This document shows, piece by piece, positions 4,702 to 42,376 of a stretch of 64,000 bases of DNA. The stretch covers positions 62,001 through 126,000 of IMG/VR virus record IMGVR_UViG_3300046808_001241. One strand, written 5' to 3'. The position numbers and the translations under genes are program-made. Below the pieces are notes generated by a model that saw only the letters and a program-made list of their open reading frames with translations, was not told the origin of the DNA and did no database searches. Position 1 is the first letter of the stretch; every line of letters starts with the position of its first letter.

Positions 4702-4719
4702 CACCCATAATTAGCTTTT

Positions 4720-5040: not shown

Positions 5041-5050
5041 ATTTAATTTT

Positions 5051-5389: not shown

Positions 5390-5394
5390 TCTTC

Positions 5395-29512: not shown

Positions 29513-31093
29513 ATGGATTACCGCTTAAAATCTTTGTATGAGCAGATGCTTAGAGGAGAGACTGTTAAACAAAACTCTAAAGGGCAACCTAAAAATTTAA
29601 CAGAGGCCTATAAAAAAACAGTCTTAACAGAAAGAACAGCATTTTATGCAAAAGATATAGCTGCTGGAGAAGAAATTCCAAATATACAAGGGTTGGAAAA
29701 TTTAGGAGCAGTTGAAGAGCCTTTAAAAATAAAGCACACCATTGCCTCTCAATCCGTATTGCCTACTCTAGAAAAAGCAATGTCAAAAGAAATATCTGGG
29801 TGGGGAGCAATCAAAGGAGTTGATGTTGATCGCCTTGCAAAAGATTTCATTGTAGCTAAAGTGTCTGGTTCGGATTTGGAAAAAATTACCGCTCACAAAA
29901 AGGAATTGACAGCATTTGAGGAAGCAGTTACAAAACCAGTACCGTTCAATTTAGTAACCGTCATAACAACAGACATCAAAACAAAAACTGATGTAGAAGC
30001 AACTCCCGAAAGTTTGGGTATGATTTTTAAACGGTTGTTTGAAGAGGAGGGAACTATTTCAGGGACTGCAGTAGGAAAGGGAGAGTTGGCTATTTCGTTA
30101 TTTACAAATTGTTCTAAAGGAAAAACTGGAGACTTGCTGCTTCCTTCTGGAAGAACTATTGAAGTTAAAGGCAAAGGCGGAAGACTCGGCCCTGCTGAAC
30201 ATTCTCAGTCAAATACGGCTAGAGATTTAGCTCAATTTTTGCAAACAAAAAAATCTGATCAAAAACTCAATGTAGAAATGGTTCGGTTAAAAACTTCCAT
30301 TCGCAAATTTGCTAACGAATTAGAAAAAGAAGAATTATATTCACAAGTTTTTAATGACTCTTTAAAAGAAACGTTAAATCAAATTGCTGACAGCATAGAC
30401 AATCCAAAAATTTCCGAGTTTCTTCAGCAAAAAGGTTTTAAGGAAATTTACAGAGGGGGTTCAGCTTCTTCTGAGAAGATATACAACGATTTTACTAAAT
30501 TGGGATATTTGAAACCAAAGCCTCAAGACGTACCTACAGCTCCAATAGAAAAAGATTTTATAAAAACAATACAAGCAAAAATACGAAAATTTTTAACAGA
30601 TAAAGTATTTTTTAAAGGAAACGTTGAAAGAATTACAAGCAAGACCGTTGAACCTCAAGCTATAGCACAACAAACGTTTACCGTAGCTGTACAAAACTTT
30701 TTTCTAAACAATCTCGGATTAACCCCAGAAGAAGCAGCTGAAGCATTTTTATATACAAAATCCTATAATAAAGACGTTTCTCGATATTTGCCTGAAATTA
30801 AAGAATACTTTAGTAAGCATTACGCTTCAATGACGGAAGGAGACTCGACTTATTTAAAAGCAGCTATTTTTGCATTCCAACTAACTCTTTACGCTCATGC
30901 AGGAGAAGCAGGACAACATTTTGATTATTTTATGATTATGAATAATTCCTCTATGAACGCTCTTTCGTTGGATGTTAATAGAGAAAATTTATTTACATAT
31001 CTTGCTGCTGTTTATTTAAATAATACCGACAAAATTGAAATGTCGATTAGAGCTGATGGTAGACAGGGAGCATCTGCTGTTACTTTAAAATAG
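29513..31093 (+). CDS. large hypothetical protein with a PD-(D/E)xK-like motif
   Basis: VGKGELAI, GDL......IEVK motif. Confidence 0.55.
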   Translation: MDYRLKSLYEQMLRGETVKQNSKGQPKNLTEAYKKTVLTERTAFYAKDIAAGEEIPNIQGLENLGAVEEPLKIKHTIASQSVLPTLEKAMSKEISGWGAIKGVDVDRLAKDFIVAKVSGSDLEKITAHKKELTAFEEAVTKPVPFNLVTVITTDIKTKTDVEATPESLGMIFKRLFEEEGTISGTAVGKGELAISLFTNCSKGKTGDLLLPSGRTIEVKGKGGRLGPAEHSQSNTARDLAQFLQTKKSDQKLNVEMVRLKTSIRKFANELEKEELYSQVFNDSLKETLNQIADSIDNPKISEFLQQKGFKEIYRGGSASSEKIYNDFTKLGYLKPKPQDVPTAPIEKDFIKTIQAKIRKFLTDKVFFKGNVERITSKTVEPQAIAQQTFTVAVQNFFLNNLGLTPEEAAEAFLYTKSYNKDVSRYLPEIKEYFSKHYASMTEGDSTYLKAAIFAFQLTLYAHAGEAGQHFDYFMIMNNSSMNALSLDVNRENLFTYLAAVYLNNTDKIEMSIRADGRQGASAVTLK

Positions 31094-31096
31094 TAG

Positions 31097-31125
31097 TTGT
31101 CTAGTCCTCGCAAGTCTCGTAGCAT
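31097..31125 (+). promoter_or_regulatory. sigma70-type promoter for the denV-like gene
   Basis: TTGTCT-17-TAGCAT, 6 nt before GTG. Confidence 0.55.
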
Positions 31126-31131
31126 TGGTTT

Positions 31132-31659
31132 GTGAACATTTTTTGCACAAACACAGACCCAGTCATTTCCGCTCAAGAACTTTGTGATCAGCATTGCCGT
31201 TCTAAAATGCAAATTGAGTCAGCTATTCTTTTGCAGCATTGTTTTTCGAACGAAACTCTAAAGTCTGCTCCTCCTACCAAAAAAGGCACTCCTCGCAAAT
31301 CTGGGAAAGGTTACTTTAATCATCCTTGCTCGGTTTGGACGCGGGAATCTAAGGCAAATTTCGAGTGGTTAGTGGAGCATGCACTAGAAATGTTTAATGA
31401 GCGAGACTATCGCTGGCCAAGTTCCTCTGCACACTTTACAAAAACGTTTATCGAATGGTGCAGAGACAATATTGACAAAACTGATCACTGCAAAGGAACT
31501 AAGCTAACTCCTTTTGCTATTGCAATTAATCCTGAGTCTAAATGTAAGCAGATTAAAGGTTTTGACCAACTTCCAACAGTAGACAAATACAAACTATATA
31601 TTCAGCACGATAAGTCTTTCGCTACATGGTCAAAGCGTTCTAAGCCTTCTTGGTATTAG
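31132..31659 (+). CDS. denV: pyrimidine-dimer DNA glycosylase/endonuclease V-like protein
   Basis: MNIF.....P...A...CD.H..KM.IE...LL, HPC..W.R.S..NF.WL motifs. Confidence 0.7.
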   Translation: MNIFCTNTDPVISAQELCDQHCRSKMQIESAILLQHCFSNETLKSAPPTKKGTPRKSGKGYFNHPCSVWTRESKANFEWLVEHALEMFNERDYRWPSSSAHFTKTFIEWCRDNIDKTDHCKGTKLTPFAIAINPESKCKQIKGFDQLPTVDKYKLYIQHDKSFATWSKRSKPSWY

Positions 31660-31774
31660 ACTTTTTCTTTACGCAATTAGGAACTATTTTCTTGCCTTTT
31701 TTCTTTGTTCCCTTTTGCTCATACCCCTTCCAGCACTTTTCTAGTAACATATTCACGAGATTGTTAAACTTCAT
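31640..31774 (-). CDS. small basic protein with a CWKGY..VPNCV motif (44 aa, missing from the ORF track)
   Basis: MKFNNLVNMLLEKCWKGYEQKGTKKKGKKIVPNCVKKKSNTKKA; TAAATA-N5-ATG. Confidence 0.7.
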   Translation of the reverse strand: MKFNNLVNMLLEKCWKGYEQKGTKKKGKKIVPNCVKKKSNTKKA

Positions 31775-31779
31775 ACGCT

Positions 31780-31792
31780 TATTTAATAAATA
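31780..31792. promoter_or_regulatory. back-to-back late promoter motifs (tatttaataaata)
   Basis: TAAATA on each strand, each exactly 5 nt from a divergent ATG (31774 on -, 31798 on +). Confidence 0.7.
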
Positions 31793-31797
31793 AGAAT

Positions 31798-33051
31798 ATG
31801 ATAGAAACTTCATTTAGAAGCTTTTTTGGACAAGCTTCTGAACAAATTATTTTAAAAGAACAAGCTGAGGGAGTATTAAAGCATCTTACTCACTTAGAAG
31901 AGCTCGTGTTGACATCTAAGAAGCAAGGGTTGGGAATTGCTATTCAATTTTTAAAAGAATTGTATGATGTGTTGAAGGGAAAGACGGACTCTACAACTTT
32001 CGTAACTGTCAAGTGGGATGGAGCTCCAAGCGCGATTGTGGGAATCAATCCAGAAAACAATCAATTTTTCGTATCAACAAAGAGTCTAGCCAACGTTAGT
32101 CCAAAAATTAACTACACAGAAGAAGATATTAACAAAAATCACGGACACGCTCCAGGCCTAGCAGAAAAATTAAAAATGGCTTTGAAGTATCTTCCTGCAG
32201 TTATTAAAGACGGAATTTATCAAGGAGACTTTTTATTTGATAAAAGAGACCTTAAACAACAAAATATTGACGGAGAAGACCTTATTTTATTCAAACCAAA
32301 CACGATTACATATGCTATTGATCAACACAGTGCTTTAGGACAAAGAATATCAAACGCTCAAATAGGAATTATTTTTCATACAAAATATACCGGAACCAGT
32401 TTACAGAATTTGAAAAAGGGTTCGGATGTTAGTGCATCCGAATTCAATCAAACGCAAGATGTTTTTGTTGATGATGCTAAATTCAAAGACATTTCCGGAT
32501 TAGCAACGTTTACAAAAGATGAGTCAGAGAAGTTTGAAACTCTTATTGATTCTTGTGAAACAGCCGGTAATAGAATTGGCTGGGAAGAAATTCCAGAAAA
32601 CGTTTATACAAATCTCAATACTTTTATTAATAGTTTGATTCGTCAAGGTAGATTTGTTCAAAAGCCTCAAGATGAGTTTAATAACTTTATTAAATGGATT
32701 AAAGAAAAGGGACAAAAAGCGGTTGATCTACTTAAAACAGAAAAAGGAAAACAAAAGAAGCAAGAAGCAGTTGACCAATTTGTTCAAATCATAGAACAAA
32801 GCCAAAACGACATCATAAACTTGTTTAATCTATCAAAAAAGCTCGAACAAGCAAAGATGTTGTTCATTAACAAATACAATTCTGCTGTTAAAACAAAACA
32901 ATTTTTAACTCAACCTGACGGATCTTTAAAAGTGACAGCTCCAGAAGGATATGTTGCTGTTGATCACTTAGGCAATATGGTAAAATTTGTATCCAGATTA
33001 GATTTTTCAGCAGCCAATTTTTCAGTTTCTAAAGGAGAAAAGTTTAAATGA
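31798..33051 (+). CDS. DUF6267-like protein with a ligase/nucleotidyltransferase motif I (KWDG)
   Basis: HLTHLEE, TVKWDGAP, FFVSTKS, QGDFLF, F.PNTITY, PEGYVA..K. Confidence 0.7.
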   Translation: MIETSFRSFFGQASEQIILKEQAEGVLKHLTHLEELVLTSKKQGLGIAIQFLKELYDVLKGKTDSTTFVTVKWDGAPSAIVGINPENNQFFVSTKSLANVSPKINYTEEDINKNHGHAPGLAEKLKMALKYLPAVIKDGIYQGDFLFDKRDLKQQNIDGEDLILFKPNTITYAIDQHSALGQRISNAQIGIIFHTKYTGTSLQNLKKGSDVSASEFNQTQDVFVDDAKFKDISGLATFTKDESEKFETLIDSCETAGNRIGWEEIPENVYTNLNTFINSLIRQGRFVQKPQDEFNNFIKWIKEKGQKAVDLLKTEKGKQKKQEAVDQFVQIIEQSQNDIINLFNLSKKLEQAKMLFINKYNSAVKTKQFLTQPDGSLKVTAPEGYVAVDHLGNMVKFVSRLDFSAANFSVSKGEKFK

Positions 33052-33656
33052 AAACCTTTCGCCAATTCTTTTTAGAGTCCATAAAAGATACAGTAGTGTT
33101 CGCATATGGTCGTTACAATCCTCCAACTGTTGGTCATATGAAGTTAATTGAAGCAGTCGTGAACGCTGCAAAGAAAAATAATTCTGATTATTTGATTGTG
33201 CCTTCCCACTCAACAAAACCATTAGATAAAAACCCTTTAACTGTAGATCAGAAGATCGAAATTCTGAAACACATGGTTCCCGACTCTGCAAAAGTATCTG
33301 CTTTTGGGTCGACATATATTAATACTCTTCAAAAGCTTCAAGAAATGGGCTTTCAAAACGTTATTCAGGTCTGTGGATCTGACAGAGAGCCAGAGTTTAA
33401 AAGACTGGTAGATATGTATAACGGAAAACCAGATAAAACGGGAAAAGTTCCATTTAATTTTCAATCATTTACTTTTATTTCTTCTGGAGACAGAGATCCA
33501 GATTCGGAAGGAGTAGAAGGAATGAGTGCTTCTAAACTGAGAAAATTAGCTATAGAAGGAAATGTGGACGAATTTAAACGTGGAATGGCTGATTCAGTTC
33601 CTGATGAGATTAAAACCAGCACTTATAATATTCTTAGAAAAATTCTTGCAAAATAA
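33048..33656 (+). CDS. HIGH-superfamily (cytidylyltransferase-like) nucleotidyltransferase
   Basis: GRYNPPTVGH, GSDR, RDPD.EG.EGMSASKLR. Confidence 0.85.
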   Translation: MKTFRQFFLESIKDTVVFAYGRYNPPTVGHMKLIEAVVNAAKKNNSDYLIVPSHSTKPLDKNPLTVDQKIEILKHMVPDSAKVSAFGSTYINTLQKLQEMGFQNVIQVCGSDREPEFKRLVDMYNGKPDKTGKVPFNFQSFTFISSGDRDPDSEGVEGMSASKLRKLAIEGNVDEFKRGMADSVPDEIKTSTYNILRKILAK

Positions 33657-33667
33657 TAAATAAACGT

Positions 33668-34522
33668 ATGACAAAAGAGTTTGATACATTATTAGAACAA
33701 ATGCTCAGTGAAATGATGCCTGCTGATATCGAAGGCATGGGCGGACTCGGAGGAGCTGTAAAGCAAGTTAAAGCTGGAGTTCCCGAAGGAGAACCAAAGG
33801 GCCATTGGGCTCCTCTTCAAAAATTAAGCCCTGAAGACAGAGACAAGGTTCTTGAGGAAATTTTTAAAGAAGTTTTTTCTGAAAAAGAAAATACATACGC
33901 TCCAACAGTAGATAATCCCGAAGATCTTCATGGAGCAATTCAATCAGCAATTCAATCCGTTTCCGGTAAGACTGGTTTAAAGGCTTCTGGAAAATGGGCA
34001 GCAAAGTTCTTAGCCGATCGTTTGATGACTCTTTTGAAAAACAACGTCAAATACACTACTTCGAGTGGTGTTGAGTCCCTTCAAAAAGAAATGACTCAAA
34101 AAGAATTCAAGCAAGCTCTCAAACAAGCTTTAGAAGAAGCTCCTGAAGCAGAGACTGCTACGGAAGAACCAGCAGCTGAACAAGCTCCAAAATCAAATGC
34201 AGAGATGGTTTACATGAAATCCGCTGATCTTAATTCAGATGATGCAGATCTCCAAAAAGCTTTTAACAAACTTCCAGCAGACAAAGAGATGTCATGGGAA
34301 GAGGTTTTAAAATCAGTCGGAATGACAAAAGGCCTTGCTTTAATCGACGCAGGCGGACTTACAGAAACAGAAAAAGAAGTTGAAGCTGGAGAAGAAGAGT
34401 ATGGTTCTGAGCAGAAAGAATTAGAACTAGACGACGAAGACGATGCCGACTTGTCTAAGTTCGATCGACTTATTGATCCGTACTTTAGAACAACTAAAGG
34501 TAGTTACGAGCTCCCAGATTGA
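33668..34522 (+). CDS. acidic hypothetical protein, probably virion
   Basis: TAAATA-N5-ATG; N-terminus FDTLLEQMLSE. Confidence 0.6.
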   Translation: MTKEFDTLLEQMLSEMMPADIEGMGGLGGAVKQVKAGVPEGEPKGHWAPLQKLSPEDRDKVLEEIFKEVFSEKENTYAPTVDNPEDLHGAIQSAIQSVSGKTGLKASGKWAAKFLADRLMTLLKNNVKYTTSSGVESLQKEMTQKEFKQALKQALEEAPEAETATEEPAAEQAPKSNAEMVYMKSADLNSDDADLQKAFNKLPADKEMSWEEVLKSVGMTKGLALIDAGGLTETEKEVEAGEEEYGSEQKELELDDEDDADLSKFDRLIDPYFRTTKGSYELPD

Positions 34523-34529
34523 TAAATAG

Positions 34530-35825
34530 TTGCAGGATCCTGCAATGATTAAATATACTTACGACTGGGAGATTCTTACTATGACGAACATGCTGCTAAA
34601 TAGCATGTCAGACATCGTAGTTAAAAGATTCAATGTACATAAAGAACCGAGAGATCGAATCAAGGTTCGCATTGTATATGCTCCCAAGCAAAGAGTTTTA
34701 GCTGATTTGCTTGATAGAGATCAGAACTTACAATTGCCTGTAATGGCTGTAAATATTGGAGGGATAACAAGAGATACTTCCCGCGTATACAATAAAATTC
34801 TCGGTTCGTTTCAAAGCTCTACAGGCTCTACAGTCAGTTACAATGAACGGTCTCCTCTTCCCATAGATATTACATACAATGTATCAATAATGACGAGATA
34901 TCAGGAAGATATGGATCAGATTTTATCACATTTGCTTCCATACGTTAATCCTTATTTTACAATTTCGTGGAGAACTCCTCTAAGACCAGAACATGAAATT
35001 AGATCAAACGTGTTTTGGAACGGCAATGTCAATGTTCAATATCCAAATGATACAACCGCAACACAAGTAGCAAGAGTTGTTGCTGATCTTTCCTTTGTAT
35101 TTAAAGGATGGATGTTCCAAGCTAAACCAGATGATCCAATCGGAAACATTCACGTTATACACTCAACTTATACTGATAATACGAGAGGTATTTCTGAAGA
35201 ATATTTACTTGAAACCGCTGTAAGAGAATCTACTGATATATCCGATTACATTAGACATGATGGAGTTCCTCCTCAACCCAAGATCGTCGATCCTTATTAC
35301 GTTTCTGTTGGAGAAACAAAACAATTTAATCTTGTAGGAAACGCGTTTACGGTGCTAAACAATGTATATCTTTCCGGACATCCTCTTGAGTATCTTTCTA
35401 CTACTCACGCTCCTTTTTCCAATTCCCCTGAATTATCAGCTGATTATCCTCCTTTCACTGCTGTCAAGTTGTTAACGTCTGATTGGTTCTACAATAAAGA
35501 AACGCTTTGTTCATTTATCATGCCTCCTCCACACTGTGTAGGCCGGGTTGATGTAATTTTAGAAGGACCAGTTGGATACGGTAAACTCACAGAATATGTT
35601 AGAATTAATACGTTTAATCCTTTTGTTAGCGGAACTTCTCAATATAATGCTTTCGTTCCTTATCAATTTCCGTTCTTGTCAGGTATTGAAGTTAGACAAG
35701 CTGATGGAACAACGTTTGATTTTGTGTCTTTAAGTGGATCTATTTTATTAGACGGAAGCGTTGGATTCCTGCTTCAAGAAGATGGCTCAAAATTAAATCT
35801 CAATCAAACATTAAGTACTTGTTAA
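34530..35825 (+). CDS. gp15: tail completion/sheath stabilizer gp15-like with C-terminal extension
   Basis: VRIVYAPKQR, LP.M.V...GI.RD, P.DI.Y.VSIMTRYQEDMDQIL..LLPY..PY; ATG at 34545 is an alternative start. Confidence 0.8.
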   Translation: MQDPAMIKYTYDWEILTMTNMLLNSMSDIVVKRFNVHKEPRDRIKVRIVYAPKQRVLADLLDRDQNLQLPVMAVNIGGITRDTSRVYNKILGSFQSSTGSTVSYNERSPLPIDITYNVSIMTRYQEDMDQILSHLLPYVNPYFTISWRTPLRPEHEIRSNVFWNGNVNVQYPNDTTATQVARVVADLSFVFKGWMFQAKPDDPIGNIHVIHSTYTDNTRGISEEYLLETAVRESTDISDYIRHDGVPPQPKIVDPYYVSVGETKQFNLVGNAFTVLNNVYLSGHPLEYLSTTHAPFSNSPELSADYPPFTAVKLLTSDWFYNKETLCSFIMPPPHCVGRVDVILEGPVGYGKLTEYVRINTFNPFVSGTSQYNAFVPYQFPFLSGIEVRQADGTTFDFVSLSGSILLDGSVGFLLQEDGSKLNLNQTLSTC

Positions 35826-35829
35826 TATT

Positions 35830-36723
35830 ATGGCAGATCTTAAAATATCAGAACTTACCTTAGCTACAACTGTTTCTGGAACAGATGTTGTAGCGATTGT
35901 TAATCAAGGAATTACTAAAAAAGCAACTCTTGATACGCTTTTCAACGCCTCAAGTGCTTCTTATGCTCCATATATCCAGCAAGTAGTACAACCTGTTTCG
36001 ACTTTAGTTCAAACAAATTCTGCAGCATGGAATTATGCATATGTTCAAGTAAACACAAATGCAGCAGAATGGACTGATCACGTTATTTCAAACGAAAACG
36101 TAGCAATTGGGCCATTGAATATGGAACTAATTACTACAGGACATAAAAATACATCAGTTGGAGTAAAAGCTCTTTCTGCGATAACAGTAGGTTCAGGAAA
36201 CGTAGCTGTTGGTTATCAATCTTTATTTTCAACAACATCGGGAAGTGGAAATACAGCAGTTGGTTATAATGCTGGTTATGCAAATGTGGTTGGAGTTAAC
36301 AATACATACATTGGCAATCAAGCAACTGGTAATTGTCCTGATGAGTCAAATGTTATTACTTTAGGAAACTCATCCATTAAAACGCTTCGCTGCCAAGCTG
36401 CAACCATTACTAGCATTTCAGATGCAAGAGATAAAAAAGATATTGTTCCTTTAGAAGTTGGTTTAGATTTTATTAACTCATTGCATCCTGTTGAGTTTAC
36501 ATGGAATATGAGAGATGGAGGTAAAACCAAAACCAAAGACATCGGCTTTATAGCTCAACAATTACTTCAAGCTCAAGAAGAAACGACTCACACTATTCCT
36601 GGTCTCGTTAACGATGCAAATACAGAACATTTGGAAGCTTCTTATGGAAAATTAATTCCTGTGTTAGTCAAAGCAATTCAAGAACTTGCACAAGAAGTCA
36701 AAGAGCTTAAAAAAGTTCGATAG
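35830..36723 (+). CDS. tail fibre/spike with a C-terminal intramolecular chaperone (peptidase S74-like)
   Basis: MADLKISEL start, N.AVG...L..NT.G repeats, SDARDKKDI..L.P.EF.W..GFIAQ. Confidence 0.85.
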   Translation: MADLKISELTLATTVSGTDVVAIVNQGITKKATLDTLFNASSASYAPYIQQVVQPVSTLVQTNSAAWNYAYVQVNTNAAEWTDHVISNENVAIGPLNMELITTGHKNTSVGVKALSAITVGSGNVAVGYQSLFSTTSGSGNTAVGYNAGYANVVGVNNTYIGNQATGNCPDESNVITLGNSSIKTLRCQAATITSISDARDKKDIVPLEVGLDFINSLHPVEFTWNMRDGGKTKTKDIGFIAQQLLQAQEETTHTIPGLVNDANTEHLEASYGKLIPVLVKAIQELAQEVKELKKVR

Positions 36724-36754
36724 TTGACATTAAAACAATGTATTGGATTATAAA
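36724..36754 (+). promoter_or_regulatory. sigma70-type promoter
   Basis: TTGACA-19-TATAAA, 6 nt before ATG 36761. Confidence 0.5.
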
Positions 36755-36760
36755 AGTCCA

Positions 36761-36982
36761 ATGAACACATACATTAAACCAATCGAACACATCACTGGAC
36801 GCAAAACCCAACTCGACTCTGGACTTACAGTTGCTCGTAAGATCAAGATGATTAGTCGTCACTTGAATCCCTCGAAGTACGAGTTTCTCGGCTTCCTTGA
36901 TCGTACCAATGAGGCCATTCTTCGTCCTCGTTACCACAACGTCCGCAACTCCCTCGGTCAGTTTGCGCCAGTTGCAGAGTAA
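36761..36982 (+). CDS. small basic hypothetical protein in its own transcription unit
   Basis: Flanked by a promoter and a terminator; C-ending codon bias. Confidence 0.6.
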   Translation: MNTYIKPIEHITGRKTQLDSGLTVARKIKMISRHLNPSKYEFLGFLDRTNEAILRPRYHNVRNSLGQFAPVAE

Positions 36983-36999
36983 TAGAAAATAAACCTAAA

Positions 37000-37040
37000 A
37001 AAAAAGACCCTTTGCTGTTGCATTGGGTCTTTTTTCTTTT
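37000..37040 (+). terminator. intrinsic terminator (probably bidirectional)
   Basis: aaaaaagaccc / gggtctttttt inverted repeat with T and A tracts. Confidence 0.7.
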
Positions 37041-37052
37041 ATACTAGAAGAG

Positions 37053-37397
37053 ATGACTACAAACATTATCGTAAAATTGCAGTACGAAGCCCTTCATAAT
37101 TGGCCAGGAGTCGTTAATGTATTGCCTGACAAGCCTTGGATTCACATGCTTAAAGACAAGCATCGACATATATTTCATATTACTTTGGAAAAACAAGTAA
37201 CTCACTCCGATAGAGATGTTGAAATTATTTTGTTTAAACAGGAAGTGCTTCGCAAGCTTGAAGTATTTTTTGGAAGACCAGGAGATTTAGGTGCAATGTC
37301 CTGTGAAATGCTTGCAGAGCAGCTTCTGAAAGAATATGATTGCAATTCAGTAGAAGTGCTTGAAGATAACGAAAACGGAGCTAAAGTCTATAAATGA
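37053..37397 (+). CDS. queD: QueD/PTPS-like T-fold protein
   Basis: LHNWP, HRHIFH Zn-histidines, SCE.LAE, VEV.ED.ENGA; ATG at 37053. Confidence 0.65.
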   Translation: MTTNIIVKLQYEALHNWPGVVNVLPDKPWIHMLKDKHRHIFHITLEKQVTHSDRDVEIILFKQEVLRKLEVFFGRPGDLGAMSCEMLAEQLLKEYDCNSVEVLEDNENGAKVYK

Positions 37398-37810
37398 TTT
37401 CATTCGTCTGTGGTCAGCTTTGTTCTGGTAAAACTCTTTATTCTAGAGCTCTTGCGCATACGTCATCAGCTCATTATGTAGAAGTCGGAGATGTGGTGAG
37501 AATGATAAAAATTAGTCAAGATCGCAAGGTACTTCAAAACTCAAAAGAGCTATCCGGAGCAATTGTAAATTGGATTAAGAAAAGTTGTAATGAACACACG
37601 GAGCTTGTTGTATCTGGTGTACGTCAAAAAGAAATTTTGGAAAATTTTCCAAATTCTACTTTACTTTGGATCGAATGTCCGATTAATACTAGAAAAGAGC
37701 GATATCAAAAGCGTGCTCGTGTTGGAGATACGCAAACGTTTGAAGAAGCGGAACAAGGAGATATCAATCTTGGAATAATTGACGTCAGAAATTATATTTT
37801 TAGTAAATGA
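37394..37810 (+). CDS. P-loop nucleotide kinase (adenylate/dephospho-CoA kinase-like)
   Basis: GQLCSGKT, GD.VR, SGVR, R..R lid. Confidence 0.75.
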   Translation: MISFVCGQLCSGKTLYSRALAHTSSAHYVEVGDVVRMIKISQDRKVLQNSKELSGAIVNWIKKSCNEHTELVVSGVRQKEILENFPNSTLLWIECPINTRKERYQKRARVGDTQTFEEAEQGDINLGIIDVRNYIFSK

Positions 37811-38598
37811 AATTCTATTGCATACCACCTAATAACCACTTAGATTTGATGGATCAGTCAGAAAGATATTTTGGTCTTGCTCATCTATATCATCAAAACG
37901 AAAAATACAAGAGACATTTTTTAGCACTTCGTAACAGAAGTCCGAAAGTATGGATAACCATGGATTGCGGAAGTGCAGAACATAGTCTTGTTACAGAAGA
38001 TGTTTTGCTAAATATTGTTGCAGAACTCAAGCCAGACGAAGTAATTGCTCCAGATGTTTTGTTTAATAAAGACGAAACACTGAAGAACTTTAAATCGTTT
38101 GTACAAAAAATGTATAACAAAGGTCTTTTGTCGCACACCTCGATATTTGCTTGTCCTCAAGGTTCTAATAAAGAAGAATGGCTGGAGTGTTATTATCAAA
38201 TGGTTGTTAGTCCTTTCGTAAAATGCATTGGTCTTAGTAAAATTGCAGTCCCAAAATGCTGGAATGATGCAGAAGGAGATATAATGATTGGAGTGTCTAG
38301 AAACCAATGTGTAAAGGAACTAATCGACAAACAATGGCTCATTAAACCTCTACATCTTCTTGGAATGGGAGAACATGATGAATTTGAATACTATTTGAAA
38401 AACAGAGTTCCAAACATTCGTAGTTCTGATAGTTGTTACACAGTTCTTGCTGCGATGAACGGTATTGATTTTGAGAGTGGAGATACTTCAAGAGTGCCTA
38501 CAACGAATGCTTACTTTGATGCAACTCTTACAGAAGAACAAGTAAAAATTGCTAAAAAGAACTTTAACTATCTAAAAAACAAATACAAAGACGTATGA
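37807..38598 (+). CDS. TGT/DpdA-like TIM-barrel transglycosylase
   Basis: MDCG (compare DSG), PDV, PQG, LHLLGMG, SSDS motifs in TGT order; adjacent to QueD-like gene. Confidence 0.6.
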   Translation: MKFYCIPPNNHLDLMDQSERYFGLAHLYHQNEKYKRHFLALRNRSPKVWITMDCGSAEHSLVTEDVLLNIVAELKPDEVIAPDVLFNKDETLKNFKSFVQKMYNKGLLSHTSIFACPQGSNKEEWLECYYQMVVSPFVKCIGLSKIAVPKCWNDAEGDIMIGVSRNQCVKELIDKQWLIKPLHLLGMGEHDEFEYYLKNRVPNIRSSDSCYTVLAAMNGIDFESGDTSRVPTTNAYFDATLTEEQVKIAKKNFNYLKNKYKDV

Positions 38599-39269
38599 GT
38601 AAACTGTTAATTGTCACTTGCACACAAGCAAAAACCGATAAAGAATTTGAAGTTAGACCGATTTTTCATAGTCTAAGAAAACAGTTTGAATCAAATAAAC
38701 AAGTAGAGTTTCACATCTTTAAAGACAATCAAAGGGGTCTTTCTCAATGTTACAATGAGATTTTAAAAGATCCTGATCACATCGACAAAACTGCTTTGTT
38801 TGTGCATGATGATGTAGTGTTAGAAGATTTGTTCTTATACGAAAAACTTATTAATAGTCCGTATTCTATTACCGGCCTTGCTGGCGCTAAAACCTTCAAT
38901 AAAGCGAATGACAAGCTAGCCTGGCACCTTGCTGCAGATCGTTCAAGTTATGTGGGAGAGGTTTGTCATGTAACTAAAGACAGAGGTGTTTGGACAACAT
39001 GTTTTGGGCCAACAAATTCAAGAGCCCTTACACTAGACGGCTTGTTCATTTCTTGTAAAGTTAAAGATCTTGTGGAAAAGGAATTGTATTTTGATGAGAG
39101 CTTTGCTTTTCACTTCTATGATTTGTCTTTTTGTATGAGAGCTCATGAAAAGAAAGTTACATGCGGCGTATTGTCTATTCGAGCAGTTCATAGTGGTCTT
39201 GGAGATTCTATGTTGACGCCAGAATGGGAAAAACAAAATATATTGTTTAAAGAAAAATACTGCAAATGA
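38595..39269 (+). CDS. GT-A fold glycosyltransferase
   Basis: GLSQCYN, FVHDD, GLAG, LDGLFI, FDE.F.FHFYD.SFC, H.G. Confidence 0.8.
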   Translation: MSKLLIVTCTQAKTDKEFEVRPIFHSLRKQFESNKQVEFHIFKDNQRGLSQCYNEILKDPDHIDKTALFVHDDVVLEDLFLYEKLINSPYSITGLAGAKTFNKANDKLAWHLAADRSSYVGEVCHVTKDRGVWTTCFGPTNSRALTLDGLFISCKVKDLVEKELYFDESFAFHFYDLSFCMRAHEKKVTCGVLSIRAVHSGLGDSMLTPEWEKQNILFKEKYCK

Positions 39270-39796
39270 TTTTAACCAACAAACAAATAACAGCTATTAC
39301 TAACGAAGGTGCTTATGAATGCCTTTTTTCAAAACAAAGGTTTTCGACTGCTTTTTTTGAAGATCCTTCACCGCTGGGAAGCATTATCGTATTTGAGACT
39401 CCTGTAAAAATTGGTCCTGTGAGTTTTGAACGCTCGTTAGTTATTTGTGGAGAGCTTCCAAATACTAATATATTTGGTGGAGTTTGCTTTCAAAGACTTT
39501 ATTCAGCGCAACTTGGTTCAATTCTTTCGAATTTCTTAGAAAAGCAATGCTATGTTAACGAAAATTGTTTGTTTGTTGAACAAGAACAAACATCGATTAC
39601 GGTAGTCAATCAATTAAAATCTAGTATTATGTTTCATATTTTCCTTCCAATCGTTGTTAGTAAAGAAGGAACTAAAGGACTCTATGAAATTAAATTAGAA
39701 GAAGATAGCATGCAAGAGTTTAAAGAACATTGTGTAAATTCTTTTCATCACCTAACAAAAAGTTTGTTTCTAGAAACTCAGCGTGACAACATTTGA
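39266..39796 (+). CDS. divergent DUF366-like (BPL/LplA-fold) protein
   Basis: F....F...P.G.I..F..P, E.P.....GG..FQRL pattern; recalled similarity only. Confidence 0.45.
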   Translation: MILTNKQITAITNEGAYECLFSKQRFSTAFFEDPSPLGSIIVFETPVKIGPVSFERSLVICGELPNTNIFGGVCFQRLYSAQLGSILSNFLEKQCYVNENCLFVEQEQTSITVVNQLKSSIMFHIFLPIVVSKEGTKGLYEIKLEEDSMQEFKEHCVNSFHHLTKSLFLETQRDNI

Positions 39797-40133
39797 TTAT
39801 ATCAAAGACATCATCATAACCAAACGAGGAGACTTGCCTTTAGATGGGTATGCACCATTTTTAATAAATCGATTTTTATCGTTTATTAATCCTCAAGTTT
39901 GTGAAGCAGTTAATCAACTAAATACCAAAATACTATTAGAAGACAAATTGCTGCACTATAAGCTAATGCTGTCATTGTTTCCAAAGATGAGTTCTGTACC
40001 TTATATTAAATACGTTAAAAAGGTCCAAGAAGAGAAAGATGAGAATCAAGAACTAAAAACTAAAATAAAAGTTCTTGCTCAAAACATGGAACTTTCGGAA
40101 AGAGAAGTTACTACTTTGCTTTCTTCTTTTTAG
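39783..40133 (+). CDS. gp62: clamp loader small subunit (gp62-like)
   Basis: FDYI..I, Y.PFLINRFLS, N.LN, H/Q-Y..L..L.PK..Y.K. Confidence 0.7.
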   Translation: MTTFDYIKDIIITKRGDLPLDGYAPFLINRFLSFINPQVCEAVNQLNTKILLEDKLLHYKLMLSLFPKMSSVPYIKYVKKVQEEKDENQELKTKIKVLAQNMELSEREVTTLLSSF

Positions 40134-40668
40134 CTTCTTCTTTTTCTTTGCGCATTTTTTCTAATTTTTCGCGATCCTTTTTCAGTTGAGGATTGCGTTC
40201 GCTTTCGTCATGAAACGCACCCTTCATGTCATATTCTTTTTTCTTTTCGGAAATAACTCTGCTGAAAAGATCTTTAAAAGTCAAACCTTCTTTCTTTAAG
40301 AAATCAGGTTTCTTTTTAGATTTATCTGCAACAGCCTTTTTCATTGACTCCTTTTTATTGCCATCTTTATCAACATCCATGTAATCTGGTTTGGCTTTCT
40401 TTTTAGCCTCTTCGATGGTTTCTTGATTGTCTTTGCATTCTTCGCAGCCAGTACAATCACAGCCCTTTGCAGCATGTTTGCAATGCAATTCCTTTGCTCC
40501 TTTGTTAGTAATTACGTTGTATGCTTCAGCAAGCATGTCTTGGTCTTTTGATAATGCAGTGTTACTAAGAATAGGAGCTTGTTCGATCAATTGATCTTTA
40601 GAAGGTTCAACTTTTTTAGTAATGCCTTCGTAAAGTCCAGAAAGAGTTTGAGTGTCTTTAAATACCAT
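40111..40668 (-). CDS. basic hypothetical head-associated protein
   Basis: PDYMDVDKDGNKKESMKKA motif, CKH..GCDC.GC..C cluster; TAAATA-N6-ATG. Confidence 0.6.
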   Translation of the reverse strand: MVFKDTQTLSGLYEGITKKVEPSKDQLIEQAPILSNTALSKDQDMLAEAYNVITNKGAKELHCKHAAKGCDCTGCEECKDNQETIEEAKKKAKPDYMDVDKDGNKKESMKKAVADKSKKKPDFLKKEGLTFKDLFSRVISEKKKEYDMKGAFHDESERNPQLKKDREKLEKMRKEKEEAKKKKAK

Positions 40669-40718
40669 ATATCTTATTTATCAGTTGAACGGTTATTTTC
40701 TTGGCCTAAATACTGTAT

Positions 40719-41090
40719 ATGCAACAACCACTAGCTCGCGAAAACAACGGTCTTGCTGACCTCGATCCCTATCAAAACTGCCCACTTCCAGAGGATTTTG
40801 AAATTACAGAACTTCTCGGCGATGTAATTCAGGTAGTTTATGCTGATACAGCAGAAGACGGCAGAAGCCTTGTACGCAACGGAATAATTCTTCCAGCAGA
40901 AGTTGTTGACAGCAAAGCCTGGAGAATCGGTAAAGTTATTATGGCTGGTCCAAACACAAAACAAGTAAAAGCTGGACAATACGTCATCTTTCCAGGAGAT
41001 AAAGGAATTAAAGGCATTCAAAAGAACGGAAAAATGAATATCTTCTTAAACGAAGAGAGGATTTTTGGTATTTGCGCTCCAGCTAACTAA
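40719..41090 (+). CDS. groES: GroES-like co-chaperonin
   Basis: LLGD.I.V, GIILP, GKV..AGP...VK.G..V.F, FLNE..I.G. Confidence 0.85.
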   Translation: MQQPLARENNGLADLDPYQNCPLPEDFEITELLGDVIQVVYADTAEDGRSLVRNGIILPAEVVDSKAWRIGKVIMAGPNTKQVKAGQYVIFPGDKGIKGIQKNGKMNIFLNEERIFGICAPAN

Positions 41091-41476
41091 TGCGTCTTGG
41101 AAGAACAGCTCTGTGGATGTTATTGCAGACAAACGCTGCAGAGCTGAGATTCCATCGCCGAATTGATAAACCAGGATATAACGATTATAGAAGAATGCTC
41201 TGTACAAACGATCAAAAGCTTCTGCAGTCTGCTCCTGGAAAAACAATCTTTCATTATAGACCACCAACTTCATCATTAAGATATGATCCGGCTGCTAAAA
41301 ATCTTGTAGTAGCTTTTGATATATTTCTTCAAGACTGGCGTATGGTTAATTGCAACGATGTAGAAGTTATTGCTGTGATTAAAACCTCTCCAGATCCTCA
41401 ACCATTTTGGAAGTATTTTTACGAAAGATTAGTCGATATGTCTGCTTCCCAAAAAGCTAGATTCATGAATACATAA
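41090..41476 (+). CDS. SH3-like (WYL/DUF2693-like) protein
   Basis: R.MLCT, LVV.FD....DWR.V pattern. Confidence 0.45.
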   Translation: MRLGRTALWMLLQTNAAELRFHRRIDKPGYNDYRRMLCTNDQKLLQSAPGKTIFHYRPPTSSLRYDPAAKNLVVAFDIFLQDWRMVNCNDVEVIAVIKTSPDPQPFWKYFYERLVDMSASQKARFMNT

Positions 41477-41477
41477 T

Positions 41478-41828
41478 ATGGTTATTTCATCAACAATTCA
41501 CTTAGATCAAGTTCCTGGAGAACCTTTTTTAGTTTCTTGTCTGCAGAAGAACTTAAATTTTTCAATCAATGGAAAGTTAATCAAAAAAGGAAAACTAATC
41601 CTTTTCAGAAGAATACATTATTATGTACAAATTGCTCTAATCACAGACAGAAACGTTAGAGAAAATTTTGAAATACCAATCCCCTTCAAAGTGGAGAATT
41701 ACCTGGAAGAAGGATTGTTGTATTTTGATTACAGATTAAAATCGTTAGAAACAGAGTGTTTACCAATAATACCAGAAAAAGTGCCTTCTATGTATTTTAA
41801 CAAAATTCTTGAAATACAAGCAAGTTAG
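41478..41828 (+). CDS. hypothetical protein
   Basis: 116-aa operonic ORF. Confidence 0.55.
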   Translation: MVISSTIHLDQVPGEPFLVSCLQKNLNFSINGKLIKKGKLILFRRIHYYVQIALITDRNVRENFEIPIPFKVENYLEEGLLYFDYRLKSLETECLPIIPEKVPSMYFNKILEIQAS

Positions 41829-42376
41829 TTGTATATTCTTAATTTGTAGTTATAGAATTCGTTAGTGTTTCCCCAAAACCTATCTACGTCATCTATATCA
41901 ATTTCTTCGCTTCCGTTAACAGCCTTTATTGTTTTATTTCTTGCTGTCGCTTCTTTAATTAGACGCTTCCAAAAGTTTTCACCTTGTAGAGTGTGCTTTG
42001 AATCAGAGGTGATAGATTTAACATTTGGTAGGTAGTACTCAAAGAACAAATAGAAAGCCATGCCTTTTGAAGACTTTCTGTTCCAAACTCCTGTCATTTG
42101 CATGTCTCCATCTATCAATTTGTAAATAAAATAACAGGAAATGAGGGGAGTTTTGTTAACAAAATAGTCTACTGTTGATTCAAATTCGGTTCTATACAAC
42201 GTTAAATCGACAGTATCTTTGAGCTTAATCTGTTCAACAATATTGCCATCTCGAATTAATTCCAAAGCTTCTTGCTGATTTAAAGCCTCATTATCCAATA
42301 CATCATCATAACTCATCCCCAAACGCATCGGAGATTCTTTAAGAACGACCTTTTGAAAATATTCTTTAAATTTCAT
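41825..42376 (-). CDS. hypothetical protein, possible GNAT-like fold
   Basis: MKFKEYF...LKE leader; I.SD..HT.QGE.FWK.L motif. Confidence 0.5.
   Translation of the reverse strand: MKFKEYFQKVVLKESPMRLGMSYDDVLDNEALNQQEALELIRDGNIVEQIKLKDTVDLTLYRTEFESTVDYFVNKTPLISCYFIYKLIDGDMQMTGVWNRKSSKGMAFYLFFEYYLPNVKSITSDSKHTLQGENFWKRLIKEATARNKTIKAVNGSEEIDIDDVDRFWGNTNEFYNYKLRIYN

What the first reader, a model, noticed from the sequence alone, without database searches (positions are those of the whole stretch)
29513..42376. T4 capsid-targeting-like N-termini on enzymes: a putative packaged and injected enzyme payload
Seen: leaders MKTFRQFFLE (nucleotidyltransferase), MIETSFRSFF..ILKE (DUF6267-like), MKFKEYF..VLKE (41825), MTKEFDTLLE (33668), MDYRLKSLYE (29513), MKFNNLVNMLLE (31774), plus MNFQLIVEEILEE (56291) and MSDIDFISLCE (60708). 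Several of these (31774, 31798, 33668, 60708) have TAAATA 5 nt before the ATG. Established: T4 internal proteins carry the capsid targeting sequence MKT(Y/F)(Q/K)EF..E, which gp21 cleaves after Glu. Inference: these late-expressed enzymes are loaded into the head and delivered with the DNA to act before phage gene expression, for example against host defence.
Basis: partly seen in the sequence, partly recalled or inferred. Interest (0 to 1): 0.75.

Follow-up and report, generated by a model that had tools for sequence, protein, structure and literature searches.

The report
T4-type capsid-targeting leaders on phage enzymes
In this T4-like phage, several late proteins, including an NMNAT-like enzyme, a ligase-like enzyme and two tiny basic proteins, start with a short conserved leader very like the signal T4 uses to load proteins into its head. 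This would explain why such enzymes keep turning up inside cyanophage particles.

Summary
All eight quoted N-termini are in the sequence, and TAAATA lies 5 nt before the four ATGs named.

The window belongs to a 217-kb T4-like myophage. It encodes a gp21-type S77 prohead protease, a gp22-like scaffold and a gp23 capsid protein.

The nucleotidyltransferase leader MKTFRQFFLE closely matches the T4 leaders (IPII/III MKTYQEFIAE, IPI MKTFKEF...ITE).
- It is conserved in about 100 distinct metagenomic homologues: F4, F/Y7, F/L/I8, a free position 9, and E10 in 90 of 101.
- It keeps its amino acids through synonymous codon changes.
- It precedes the Rossmann core as a low-confidence helix.
- The same leader type heads unrelated proteins in relatives.

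The DUF6267 protein looks like a ligase-type nucleotidyltransferase. It, a 284-aa acidic protein and two small, very basic proteins have conserved leaders ending in L/I-x-E.

Two listed cases are weak (29513) or untestable (60708). A loose motif is only about 1.8-fold enriched genome-wide.

Cleavage, injection and an anti-defence role remain inferred.

Verdict: a new member of the known T4 capsid-targeting system, carrying new cargo.

The parts
33048..33656 (+). HxGH nucleotidyltransferase (NMNAT/NadD/PPAT fold), 202 aa. The leader is residues 1-10, MKTFRQFFLE (33048-33077). Its start overlaps the stop of the upstream DUF6267 gene, so the two are probably co-transcribed.
   Evidence: Pfam PF01467, 30.3 bits. 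Foldseek matches NadD/NMNAT/PPAT at E 3e-6 to 1e-4. Leader conserved in homologues, E10 in 90 of 101 distinct leaders. AF2 gives residues 1-10 pLDDT 59, against above 86 for the core.
31798..33051 (+). DUF6267 protein, 417 aa, a ligase-superfamily-like nucleotidyltransferase. The leader is residues 1-21, MIETSFRSFFGQASEQIILKE (31798-31860).
   Evidence: PF19782, E 2.9e-97, starting at residue 28. K72-x-D74-G75, E383-G384 and K396 are invariant in A3. The best structural matches are RNA/DNA ligase adenylyltransferase domains, Z 8.2 to 6. The model shows a leader helix at 6-13 and a disordered segment at 19-26. The leader module and a hydrophobic-x-E site are found in 92 distinct homologue N-termini.
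33668..34522 (+). Acidic 284-aa protein of unknown fold (60 D/E, 33 K/R). Leader MTKEFDTLLE|QMLSE| with two candidate sites, E10 and E15 (33668-33712).
   Evidence: TAAATA 5 nt upstream. Of 28 diverse representatives starting MT.xF[DN], E10 is present in 22 and an L/I-x-E at about 13-15 in all 28. The same leader is present in 10 syntenic contigs.
31640..31774 (-). Small basic protein, 44 aa. Leader MKFNNLVNMLLE (31739-31774), then a 32-aa part with 14 K/R and a CWKGY...VPNC motif.
   Evidence: TAAATA 5 nt upstream on the minus strand. Conserved with leader and promoter in L010, L006 and L007. Composition.
56013..56291 (-). Small basic protein, 92 aa. Leader MNFQLIVEEILEE (56253-56291), then a 79-aa part holding all 24 K/R of the protein.
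   Evidence: Of 28 distinct N-termini recovered from IMG/VR relatives, nearly all read F..LV..[IL]LxE followed by [AGS]..KCTGP, with P3 L/I, a free P2 and P1 Glu. It lies in a late operon behind the head-tail adaptor gene.
41825..42376 (-). 183-aa protein of a four-member paralogue family. Leader MKFKEYFQKVVLKE|SPMRLG (42335-42376).
   Evidence: The paralogues at genome positions 13782, 61397 and 12139 have leaders of different length before a conserved E|SP junction. Ten orthologues keep the leader. It has no TAAATA of its own and lies downstream of the capsid operon. A GNAT-like fold is only an Atlas lead.
29513..31093 (+). 526-aa protein with no family. A weak candidate leader, MDYRLKSLYE.
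   Evidence: Orthologues read DY[RK]L..LY[EK]; the Glu is Lys in L010 and P3 is Ala in L013. Probably transcribed from the TAAATA promoter of the upstream 86-aa gene at 29243.
60708..61169 (+). 153-aa protein. Candidate leader MSDIDFISLCE, unverified.
   Evidence: TAAATA at 60697-60702, 5 nt before the ATG. No relatives were found in the viral contig scan, so conservation could not be tested.
46718..47395 (-). Prohead protease, a gp21 homologue (Peptidase_S77). It is the presumed enzyme that removes the leaders.
   Evidence: PF03420, E 4e-25. phrog_207 head maturation protease, E 2.7e-54. TAAATA upstream.
45582..46547 (-). gp22-like scaffolding protein, the presumed docking partner of the leaders.
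   Evidence: phrog_237 (E 6e-4) and PF25623 T4_CASP (E 5e-4, below the Pfam cut-off). Its position between protease and capsid gene matches T4.
44092..45537 (-). gp23 major capsid protein. The predicted maturation site is L54-R55-E56|G.
   Evidence: phrog_138, E 1.5e-87. In alignment A1 the T4 gp23 site LTE|A falls near WCLRE|GS, which is conserved in L008 and L010.
31780..31792 (.). Back-to-back divergent late promoters TATTTA-A-TAAATA. They serve the small basic protein gene (minus strand) and the DUF6267 gene (plus strand).
   Evidence: Sequence read directly. The same arrangement is present in L010.

Best explanation
Several late proteins of this T4-like phage carry an N-terminal capsid-targeting propeptide of the T4 type. 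It is a short amphipathic helix with an aromatic residue near position 4 and hydrophobic residues 3-4 positions later. It ends in hydrophobic-x-Glu.

The proposed steps are these.
1. The genes are transcribed from TAAATA late promoters while proheads assemble.
2. The leader docks the protein on the gp22-like scaffolding core.
3. The gp21-type S77 protease cuts after the Glu and frees the mature protein inside the head.
4. The protein stays with the packaged DNA and leaves with it at infection.

The cargo is:
- two small, very basic proteins, analogous to T4 internal proteins;
- an NMNAT/PPAT-fold nucleotidyltransferase;
- a ligase-superfamily-like DUF6267 protein;
- an acidic 284-aa protein;
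- probably a 183-aa protein family.

Shown: the leaders, their conservation, their presence on unrelated proteins, the protease and scaffold genes, the promoters, and (from the literature) virion association of NMNAT-like homologues.

Inferred: docking on the scaffold, cleavage, ejection, and what the enzymes do in the host. My guess is nucleotide-cofactor or nucleic-acid-end chemistry that counters early host defence.
For: 1. Likeness to T4. MKTFRQFFLE compares with MKTYQEFIAE and MKTFKEF...ITE taken from the T4 record. T4 genetics puts targeting at residues 4 and 7 and processing at residues 8 and 10 (PMC9026906).
2. Conservation. In 101 distinct leaders of nucleotidyltransferase homologues (47-89% identical overall), P4 is F/Y, P3 is F75/L9/I4, P2 is free and E10 is present in 90. 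Synonymous codon changes show the selection acts on the protein.
3. Portability. MKTF-type leaders head unrelated proteins in relatives:
   - in L014, the DUF6267 orthologue and a 146-aa Zn_protease-like protein;
   - in L015, 361-aa and 145-aa proteins;
   - in L016, 313-aa and 229-aa proteins;
   - in P-SSM4, a 196-aa protein.
   The strict pattern occurs 14 times in 516 ORFs, against 0.57 expected.
4. Leader and domain are separable. DUF6267 homologues have spacer indels between the SF..FF module and the [IL][ILV]xE site. Cyanophage orthologues lack the leader. The AF2 models give a low-confidence helix plus a disordered linker.
5. Machinery. An S77 protease, a scaffold, and an MCP with an L-R-E site are present. 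TAAATA is depleted genome-wide but sits 5-6 nt before 52 gene starts, including structural genes and the leader genes.
6. Basic cargo. Both small proteins have hydrophobic/acidic leaders and very basic mature parts. The 56291 family keeps L/I-x-E in nearly all of its 28 variants. In L065 two CWxGY modules are each preceded by LEE.
7. Virion proteomics. The S-CREM2 cytidylyltransferase ORF154 and the S-SCSM1 NMNAT ORF91 were detected in purified virions, along with several neighbouring genes (PMC10665884, PMC9602691). They begin MKNFSSFLTE|A and MKSFLQFLKE|A.
Against: - No direct evidence of cleavage or ejection exists for any of these proteins.
- The proteomics papers themselves allow carry-over of abundant proteins through CsCl purification.
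- The nucleotidyltransferase has Phe at P3, where T4 gp21 prefers Leu/Ile.
- HTVC008M and one metagenomic homologue lack Glu at position 10.
- In the 33668 and 41825 families, conservation runs on past the proposed site, so the boundary between leader and domain is not sharp.
- The loose motif is only weakly enriched genome-wide, and not significantly among genes with their own TAAATA.
- A PSSM built from the nucleotidyltransferase leaders picks out only the DUF6267 leader in this genome.
- The complex prediction of protease with leader gave no answer.
Confidence: 0.7

Rival explanations
1. The leaders do target proteins to the prohead, but the proteins are assembly or core components, like T4 gp67 and gp68. 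After cleavage they are degraded or expelled, or they act only inside the head. They are not an injected enzyme payload.
For: T4 uses the same protease and motif on core proteins that mostly leave the head (PMC9026906). The acidic 284-aa protein looks more like a core or scaffold accessory than an enzyme. A 48-aa ORF between protease and scaffold also ends a candidate leader with M-I-E before a basic tail.
Against: NMNAT-like homologues are detected in mature, CsCl-purified virions (PMC10665884, PMC9602691). Intact catalytic motifs are kept across the two enzyme families. That is hard to explain for a purely structural role.
Confidence: 0.15
2. The N-terminal segments are ordinary parts of each protein, for example a helix used for oligomerisation or membrane contact. 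Their likeness to the T4 signal is convergence of short amphipathic helices.
For: The loose motif is common: 4.5% of internal windows meet it. In the 33668 and 41825 families conservation continues beyond the proposed site. The models place a helix there.
Against: The same leader occurs on proteins with unrelated folds. It is absent from the DUF6267 orthologues of P-SSM4 and Syn9. It lies ahead of the Pfam domain boundary. It is joined by a variable-length or disordered spacer. Seven of its first seven residues match T4 IPI identically or conservatively.
Confidence: 0.1
3. The conserved starts reflect selection on the mRNA (an A/T-rich, unstructured translation start), not on a peptide signal.
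For: The leaders begin ATG AAA ACN TTT, which is A/T-rich. Lys as the second codon is common in this genome.
Against: Amino acids are kept through synonymous changes: ACC/ACG/ACA, CGC/AGA/CGA, TTC/TTT, GAG/GAA. The constraint extends to codon 10, with a specific Glu. Position 9 is free at the amino-acid level.
Confidence: 0.03

Closest known systems
T4 internal proteins IPI, IPII and IPIII with their capsid targeting sequence (Mullaney and Black 1996; reviewed in PMC9026906, PMC3012670)
   Same: - An N-terminal 10-19-residue leader starting MKT[FY], with an aromatic at 4 and Phe at 7.
- It ends in hydrophobic-x-Glu.
- The genes are late.
- A gp21-type protease and a gp22-type scaffold are encoded nearby.
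- The leader is the only part shared between otherwise unrelated cargo.
- Two of the cargo proteins here are small and very basic, like the IPs.
   Different: - The phage is only distantly related to T-even phages. Its capsid protein is about 33% identical to T4 gp23 and about 34% to its best matches in the phage collection, all marine cyanophages.
- Most cargo here is enzyme-like and conserved across many phages, not a hypervariable anti-restriction inhibitor.
- P3 is often Phe.
- Several leader classes coexist: MKTF-type, MTKxFD-type and F..LVE..L.E-type.
T4 Alt, the ADP-ribosyltransferase packaged in the head, processed by gp21 and injected (PMC9026906, PMC5694885)
   Same: An enzyme, not a structural protein, that is loaded into the prohead through a cleaved propeptide and delivered with the DNA to act at the start of infection.
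   Different: The chemistry differs: NMNAT/PPAT-fold and ligase-like nucleotidyltransferases instead of an ADP-ribosyltransferase. Alt is also cut at its C-terminus; C-terminal processing was not examined here.
Virion-associated NMNAT-like or cytidylyltransferase proteins of T4-like cyanophages (S-SCSM1 ORF91, S-CREM2 ORF154, S-CBWM1; PMC9602691, PMC10665884)
   Same: Homologous proteins (tblastn 30-41% identity to the listed cyanophage homologues). They have the same kind of leader, MK[SNK]F..FL.E|A. In S-SCSM1 and P-SSM4 the same DUF6267-like neighbour is present.
   Different: The cyanophage proteins carry a 30-80-residue spacer between leader and catalytic domain, and extra C-terminal domains. 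The two virion-proteome papers read here propose no loading mechanism. Searches of the held library found no paper linking the capsid targeting sequence to these phages.
Ejection proteins of giant phages phiKZ and SPN3US with long propeptides cut at S/A-x-E (PMC5694885)
   Same: A gp21-related protease cuts after Glu. The propeptides are thought to target cargo, including enzymes such as the virion RNA polymerase, into the head.
   Different: In those phages the propeptides are mostly over 100 residues and P3 is Ser/Ala. Here the leaders are 10-21 residues with Leu/Ile/Phe at P3, as in T4.

Membership tests
T4-type capsid targeting sequence (CTS) cargo | N-terminal propeptide of about 10-19 residues with aromatic or hydrophobic residues at positions 4 and 7, the targeting determinants in T4 | tested here: met
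   33048 has F4 and F7. Its homologues have F4 in nearly all and F/Y7 in 88 of 90. DUF6267 has the module SF..FF shifted by two residues. The T4 reference leaders were read from the T4 record.
T4-type capsid targeting sequence (CTS) cargo | The propeptide ends in the gp21 cleavage motif Leu/Ile-x-Glu | tested here: inconclusive
   Met for DUF6267 (P3 I/L/V), the 56291 family (P3 L/I), the 33668 family (L-x-E at about residue 15 in 28 of 28), 31774 and 41825. The nucleotidyltransferase has Phe at P3 in 75 of 90 leaders and Leu/Ile in 13. Whether this protease accepts Phe is unknown.
T4-type capsid targeting sequence (CTS) cargo | The phage encodes a gp21-type prohead protease and a gp22-type scaffolding core | tested here: met
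   Peptidase_S77, E 4e-25. Scaffold hits to phrog_237 and T4_CASP are weak, but the gene sits in the T4 gene order.
T4-type capsid targeting sequence (CTS) cargo | The leader is shared by otherwise unrelated proteins (a portable signal) | tested here: met
   Unrelated carriers are found in L014, L015, L016, L005 and P-SSM4. The strict pattern occurs 14 times, against 0.57 expected. Within this genome alone, the strict MKTF type is seen only on two adjacent genes.
T4-type capsid targeting sequence (CTS) cargo | Late expression | tested here: inconclusive
   TAAATA lies 5 nt upstream of 31798, 33668, 31774(-) and 60708. It also precedes known structural genes. This is promoter prediction only; no transcript data were examined.
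T4-type capsid targeting sequence (CTS) cargo | The protein is present in purified virions with the propeptide removed | not testable with these tools
   Homologues were detected in S-CREM2 and S-SCSM1 virions by mass spectrometry (PMC10665884, PMC9602691). The passages read give 3 unique peptides and 11.2% coverage for the S-CREM2 protein and report no N-terminal processing.
T4-type capsid targeting sequence (CTS) cargo | Ejection into the host with the DNA | not testable with these tools
   No data.
Covalent nucleotidyltransferases (ATP-dependent RNA/DNA ligase superfamily), considered for DUF6267 | Motif I, Lys-x-Asp-Gly, with the catalytic lysine | tested here: met
   K72, D74 and G75 are invariant in 43 sequences. 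E383-G384 and K396 are also invariant and could be motifs IV and V.
Covalent nucleotidyltransferases (ATP-dependent RNA/DNA ligase superfamily), considered for DUF6267 | Adenylyltransferase-domain fold | tested here: inconclusive
   The top VIA-align matches are ligases: 5cot Z 8.2, T4 Rnl2 7.3, Trl1 7.0, REL1 6.8, T4 Rnl1 6.6 and DNA ligases about 6. Z values this size are common by the tool's own note. Foldseek probabilities are low. A profile search of PDB sequences found nothing.
HxGH nucleotidyltransferases (NMNAT/NadD/PPAT, Pfam CTP_transf_like), considered for 33048 | Rossmann-type fold with the (T/H)xGH motif and the C-terminal SxxSxxR-type motif | tested here: met
   PF01467 scores 30.3 bits against a cut-off of 21. 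H30 of PTVGH and S160-A161-S162-K163-x-R165 are invariant or nearly so. Foldseek E 3e-6 to NadD, NMNAT and PPAT. The substrate is not determined.

The most novel reading that the evidence does not exclude
A large clade of aquatic T4-like phages (this phage, its metagenomic relatives and cyanomyophages; pelagiphage HTVC008M has the genes but not the Glu-10 leader) uses a portable T4-type leader to load a conserved enzyme set into the capsid. The set is a ligase-like nucleotidyltransferase, an NMNAT/PPAT-like adenylyltransferase and accessory proteins. These are injected to repair or pre-empt damage by host defence systems in the first seconds of infection, for example NAD depletion or RNA or DNA end cleavage. 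The leader could then be used to read the injected proteome of any such phage directly from its genome.
Probability: 0.3. Interest if true: 0.8.

Novelty: new member of a known kind. Interest (0 to 1): 0.6.

Why it matters
NMNAT-like proteins have been found repeatedly in cyanophage virions. The two proteome papers read here could not say whether they are loaded on purpose or are contaminants. A conserved T4-type targeting leader with a protease site supplies a concrete, testable loading mechanism.

It also widens T4's internal-protein idea. Loading would extend from a few variable inhibitors in enteric phages to a conserved enzyme cargo in abundant aquatic phages.

Finally, it gives a sequence signature for predicting injected proteins from metagenomes. 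It points to two enzyme families, DUF6267 and the phage "cytidyltransferase", as candidates for very early host takeover or counter-defence.

Tried and rejected
- **PSSM of the nucleotidyltransferase leader scanned over all N-termini of the genome.** Only DUF6267 stood out, so the other leaders are not the same sequence class.
- **All-against-all comparison of N-terminal 14-mers versus internal 14-mers.** No global excess, because paralogous tail-fibre genes dominate both sets. It was useful only for spotting leader-only clusters.
- **Loose T4-derived rule.** Modest enrichment. Not significant for genes with their own TAAATA.
- **Megablast of the region against the phage collection.** No match.
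- **Viral contig scans for 41825-42376 and 60708.** No relatives found.
- **Sequence searches of PDB for DUF6267 and the nucleotidyltransferase.** Nothing usable.
- **Foldseek of the DUF6267 model.** Only weak hits. The ligase reading rests on VIA-align plus invariant motifs.
- **Complex prediction of protease with residues 1-30 of the nucleotidyltransferase.** No answer; not evidence either way.
- **Pfam at E up to 5 for the 526-, 284-, 183- and 44-aa proteins.** Nothing. The Atlas gave only a GNAT-like lead for the 183-aa family and no family for the 526-aa protein.
- **First structure job.** It was re-run without them.
- **Literature searches for cytitidyltransferase, DUF6267, and CTS with cyanophage.** No paper in the held library describes these leaders.
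- **Sec-type signal peptide.** Considered and rejected, because the leaders are amphipathic and acidic, not hydrophobic.

Full report
**What the window is.** The window is bases 62001-126000 of a single 217,182-bp contig with 36.7% G+C. It is a T4-like myophage.
- It encodes a gp15 tail sheath stabiliser.
- It has a head module on the minus strand: Peptidase_S77 prohead protease at 46718-47395, a gp22-like scaffold at 45582-46547, and the gp23 capsid protein at 44092-45537.
- It has many tail-fibre genes.
- The capsid protein is only about 34% identical to its best matches in the phage collection, which are marine cyanophages, and 33% to T4 gp23. No phage record matches the DNA.
- Close relatives exist only as metagenomic contigs.

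**The observation.** TAAATA lies exactly 5 nt before the ATGs at 31774(-), 31798, 33668 and 60708.

TAAATA behaves as the late promoter.
- It is about half as frequent as base composition predicts: 116 and 104 copies on the two strands, against roughly 233 and 205.
- Yet it sits within 20 nt of 52 gene starts, mostly at 5-6 nt.
- Those genes include sheath, tube, scaffold, protease and fibre genes.

The T4 reference leaders were read from the T4 record. IPII and IPIII begin MKTYQEFIAE|A, and IPI begins MKTFKEFTSTTTPVSTITE|A. According to the review PMC9026906, residues 4 and 7 of the T4 signal govern targeting and residues 8 and 10 govern processing. The gp21 motif is L/I-x-E.

**Is it more than chance?** A loose rule is met by 26 of 327 N-termini, against 4.5% of internal windows. 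The rule asks for an aromatic at residues 3-7, a hydrophobic residue three later, then hydrophobic-x-E by residue 25. The binomial p is 0.0035. Genes with their own TAAATA are not significantly enriched, p = 0.098. So the list cannot stand on motif-spotting alone. The evidence that counts is comparative.

**The nucleotidyltransferase (33048-33656).** A search of 5.8 billion proteins returned homologues of 47-89% identity. Nearly all begin MK[TS]F[KR]Q[FY][FLI]xE.
- Among 101 distinct leaders, 90 have Glu at position 10.
- P4 is F or Y in 88 of those 90, and P3 is F75/L9/I4.
- P2 takes at least eight different residues.
- The amino acids persist through synonymous codon changes. This rules out a purely nucleotide-level signal.

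The AF2 model is confident overall (pLDDT 90.5). The exception is residues 1-10 (mean 59), which form a short helix ahead of the first Rossmann strand. The fold matches NadD, NMNAT and PPAT. The HxGH and SxxSxxR-type motifs are invariant.

**Portability.** This is the hallmark of a targeting signal. In related contigs the same leader type sits on proteins unrelated to the nucleotidyltransferase:
- L014: the DUF6267 orthologue (MKTFKQHYQLMLE) and a 146-aa Zn_protease-like protein (MKTFRKFFE).
- L015: a 361-aa protein (MITFKSYLSNILLNE) and a 145-aa protein (MKNFKHFFE).
- L016: a 313-aa protein (MISFKKYYGHVIKE) and a 229-aa protein.
- P-SSM4: a 196-aa protein beginning MLSFKAYLAE.

The strict pattern ^M..F..[FY][FLIY] occurs 14 times among 516 ORFs of the genome plus related loci, against 0.57 expected. 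Nine of the 14 are orthologues of the nucleotidyltransferase. About five independent carriers remain.

**DUF6267 (31798-33051).** About 95 distinct homologue N-termini share M[LF][ED]xSFxx[FY][FY]. A spacer of variable length follows, then [ILV][ILVT]xE, then the start of the domain at HLTHLEEL.
- The site was located with a rule that requires hydrophobic-x-E. The informative number is therefore that 92 leaders have such a site in that short stretch.
- The Pfam domain starts at residue 28.
- The AF2 model (pLDDT 84) shows a helix at 6-13 and a disordered stretch at 19-26. That is where I-L-K-E21 lies.
- Cyanophage orthologues (P-SSM4, Syn9) start directly at the domain without a leader. So leader and domain are separable.

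What the protein is: K72-x-D74-G75, E383-G384 and K396 are invariant. The best structural matches are all RNA or DNA ligase adenylyltransferase domains: Naegleria RNA ligase Z 8.2, T4 Rnl2 7.3, Trl1 7.0, REL1 6.8 and T4 Rnl1 6.6. The Z values are modest and Foldseek is weak. I read it as a probable ligase-superfamily nucleotidyltransferase with a large helical insert, not a proven one.

**The two small basic proteins.** The minus-strand ORF from 31774 is a real gene. It is conserved with leader and TAAATA in L010, L006 and L007. After MKFNNLVNMLLE comes a 32-residue part with 14 Lys/Arg.

The 92-aa protein from 56291(-) has many relatives in viral contigs. I recovered 28 distinct N-termini. 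Nearly all read F..LV..[IL]LxE followed by [AGS]..KCTGP, with L/I at P3, a free P2 and Glu at P1. Its mature part holds all 24 Lys/Arg of the protein.

In L065 a larger ORF carries two CWxGY modules, each preceded by L-E-E. A hydrophobic, acidic leader on a small basic protein is the pattern of the T4 internal proteins.

**The other candidates.**
- **33668 family.** It keeps MT[KSN]xF[DN]. Glu is at position 10 in 22 of 28 diverse representatives, and an L/I-x-E lies at about 13-15 in all 28. It always has TAAATA upstream in the contigs I read. Conservation continues past the site.
- **41825-42376.** It belongs to a four-member paralogue family. The leaders differ in length before a conserved E|SP junction. 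It has no promoter of its own.
- **29513.** Weak. The Glu is Lys in one of four orthologues and P3 is Ala in another.
- **60708.** No relatives, so it cannot be tested.

**Machinery and the capsid protein.** In alignment A1 the T4 gp23 cleavage site falls near W-C-L-R-E|G in this phage. That stretch is conserved in two relatives. T4 gp24's propeptide is MAKINELLRE|S. This fits an L-x-E specificity for the S77 protease here, but it is a prediction.

**Independent support from the literature.** Mass spectrometry of purified virions detected the S-CREM2 cytidylyltransferase ORF154 and neighbours ORF155, 156 and 160 (PMC10665884). It also detected the S-SCSM1 NMNAT ORF91 and neighbours ORF89, 90, 92 and 93 (PMC9602691). 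The latter paper also cites an NMNAT in S-CBWM1 virions.

[quoted passage not shown] Both leave open whether it is carry-over, and neither proposes a loading signal.

I read the N-termini of these proteins from the records:
- S-CREM2: MKNFSSFLTE|A
- S-SCSM1: MKSFLQFLKE|A
- Syn9 gp184: MKKFSAFLSE|A
- P-SSM4: MKKFSAFLKE|A

. These are homologues of the window's enzyme (tblastn 30-41% identity for the listed cyanophage homologues). They carry the same kind of leader, here followed by a long spacer.

**Best explanation.** The leaders are T4-type capsid-targeting propeptides. Late transcription is followed by docking on the scaffold core, cleavage after Glu by the S77 protease, retention with the DNA, and release at infection.
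- Shown: the sequence features, their conservation and portability, the machinery genes, the promoters, and virion association of homologues.
- Inferred: docking, cleavage, ejection and function.

The Phe at P3 of the nucleotidyltransferase is the main mismatch with T4. That protein may be targeted without being cut, or this protease may accept Phe.

The cargo suggests nucleotide-cofactor chemistry and nucleic-acid-end chemistry at the very start of infection. A counter-defence role is a reasonable guess with no direct evidence.

**Rivals.**
- Core or assembly components that are not injected: plausible for the acidic 284-aa protein, less so for enzymes with intact catalytic motifs found in mature virions.
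- Ordinary structural helices: contradicted by portability and by orthologues without leaders.
- An mRNA-level signal: contradicted by synonymous variation.

[quoted passage not shown] It differs in phage lineage, in cargo (conserved enzymes rather than variable inhibitors), in having several leader classes, and in Phe at P3. I found no paper in the held library that links the capsid targeting sequence to cyanophages or other aquatic T4-like phages. The library lacks most subscription journals, so prior description cannot be excluded. I rate it a new member of a known kind with new cargo. Interest is 0.6.

Noticed in passing
window 16811-17266(-), 40111-40668(-); genome 14378(+), 206456(+); L016 7155-7433(-), L014 10608-11078, L015 10611-11075, L008 16331-16648(-), L010 15702-16178(-): A second recurrent N-terminal module, M..KDQQLLEEAY, heads several otherwise different small proteins. 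Most have TAAATA upstream, in this genome and in relatives. In 40111-40668 it occurs internally as KDQDMLAEAY, after a 40-residue extension. It may be another leader class containing L-x-E, or a separate domain.
   Followed up: partly
genome 42322-42546(-), outside the window: A 75-aa late protein starts MEFQKIVEEVLVE, like the 56291 leader. Its residues 11-46 are 58% identical to capsid protein residues 54-88, the stretch around the predicted maturation site.
   Followed up: no
window 31780-31792: Two late promoters sit back to back as TATTTA-A-TAAATA, driving divergent genes. The same arrangement is in L010.
   Followed up: yes
window 44092-45537(-) versus 33048-33656; L008: The capsid protein of the 209-kb contig behind L008 is 97% identical to the window's, while its nucleotidyltransferase is only 53% identical. 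This implies strong mosaicism between the head shell genes and the cargo genes.
   Followed up: no
window 42560-43993(-): A 477-aa HNH or homing endonuclease gene lies directly downstream of the capsid gene. T4 has segD in the same position. It is absent at this position in L008 and L010.
   Followed up: no
window 46566-46712(-): A 48-aa late ORF lies between protease and scaffold, where T4 has gp67 and gp68. It reads METKDIKQFIV...KMIE followed by a basic tail, so it is a possible cleaved core peptide.
   Followed up: no
L103 36627-36836 (S-SCSM1 ORF93): This 69-aa virion-detected protein ends with RTFKEFLEYIE. The sequence resembles the targeting leader but sits at the C-terminus.
   Followed up: no
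window 31132-31659(+): The phrog_624 'DNA binding protein' gene appears to start at GTG (VNIFCTN...). The same N-terminus is conserved in L013, L016 and L014, while the gene call in L010 starts later at an internal Met.
   Followed up: no
window 40719-41090(+): A Cpn10-like protein with TAAATA upstream, probably the gp31-type co-chaperonin for capsid protein folding.
   Followed up: no
L002 (HTVC008M) 4342-5004 and 5001-6791: In pelagiphage HTVC008M a P-loop protein (GGPGSGKT) sits between the DUF6267-like gene and a 596-aa nucleotidyltransferase fusion. That fusion's leader lacks Glu at position 10. The profile of phrog_455 joins DUF6267 and the nucleotidyltransferase in one family.
   Followed up: partly
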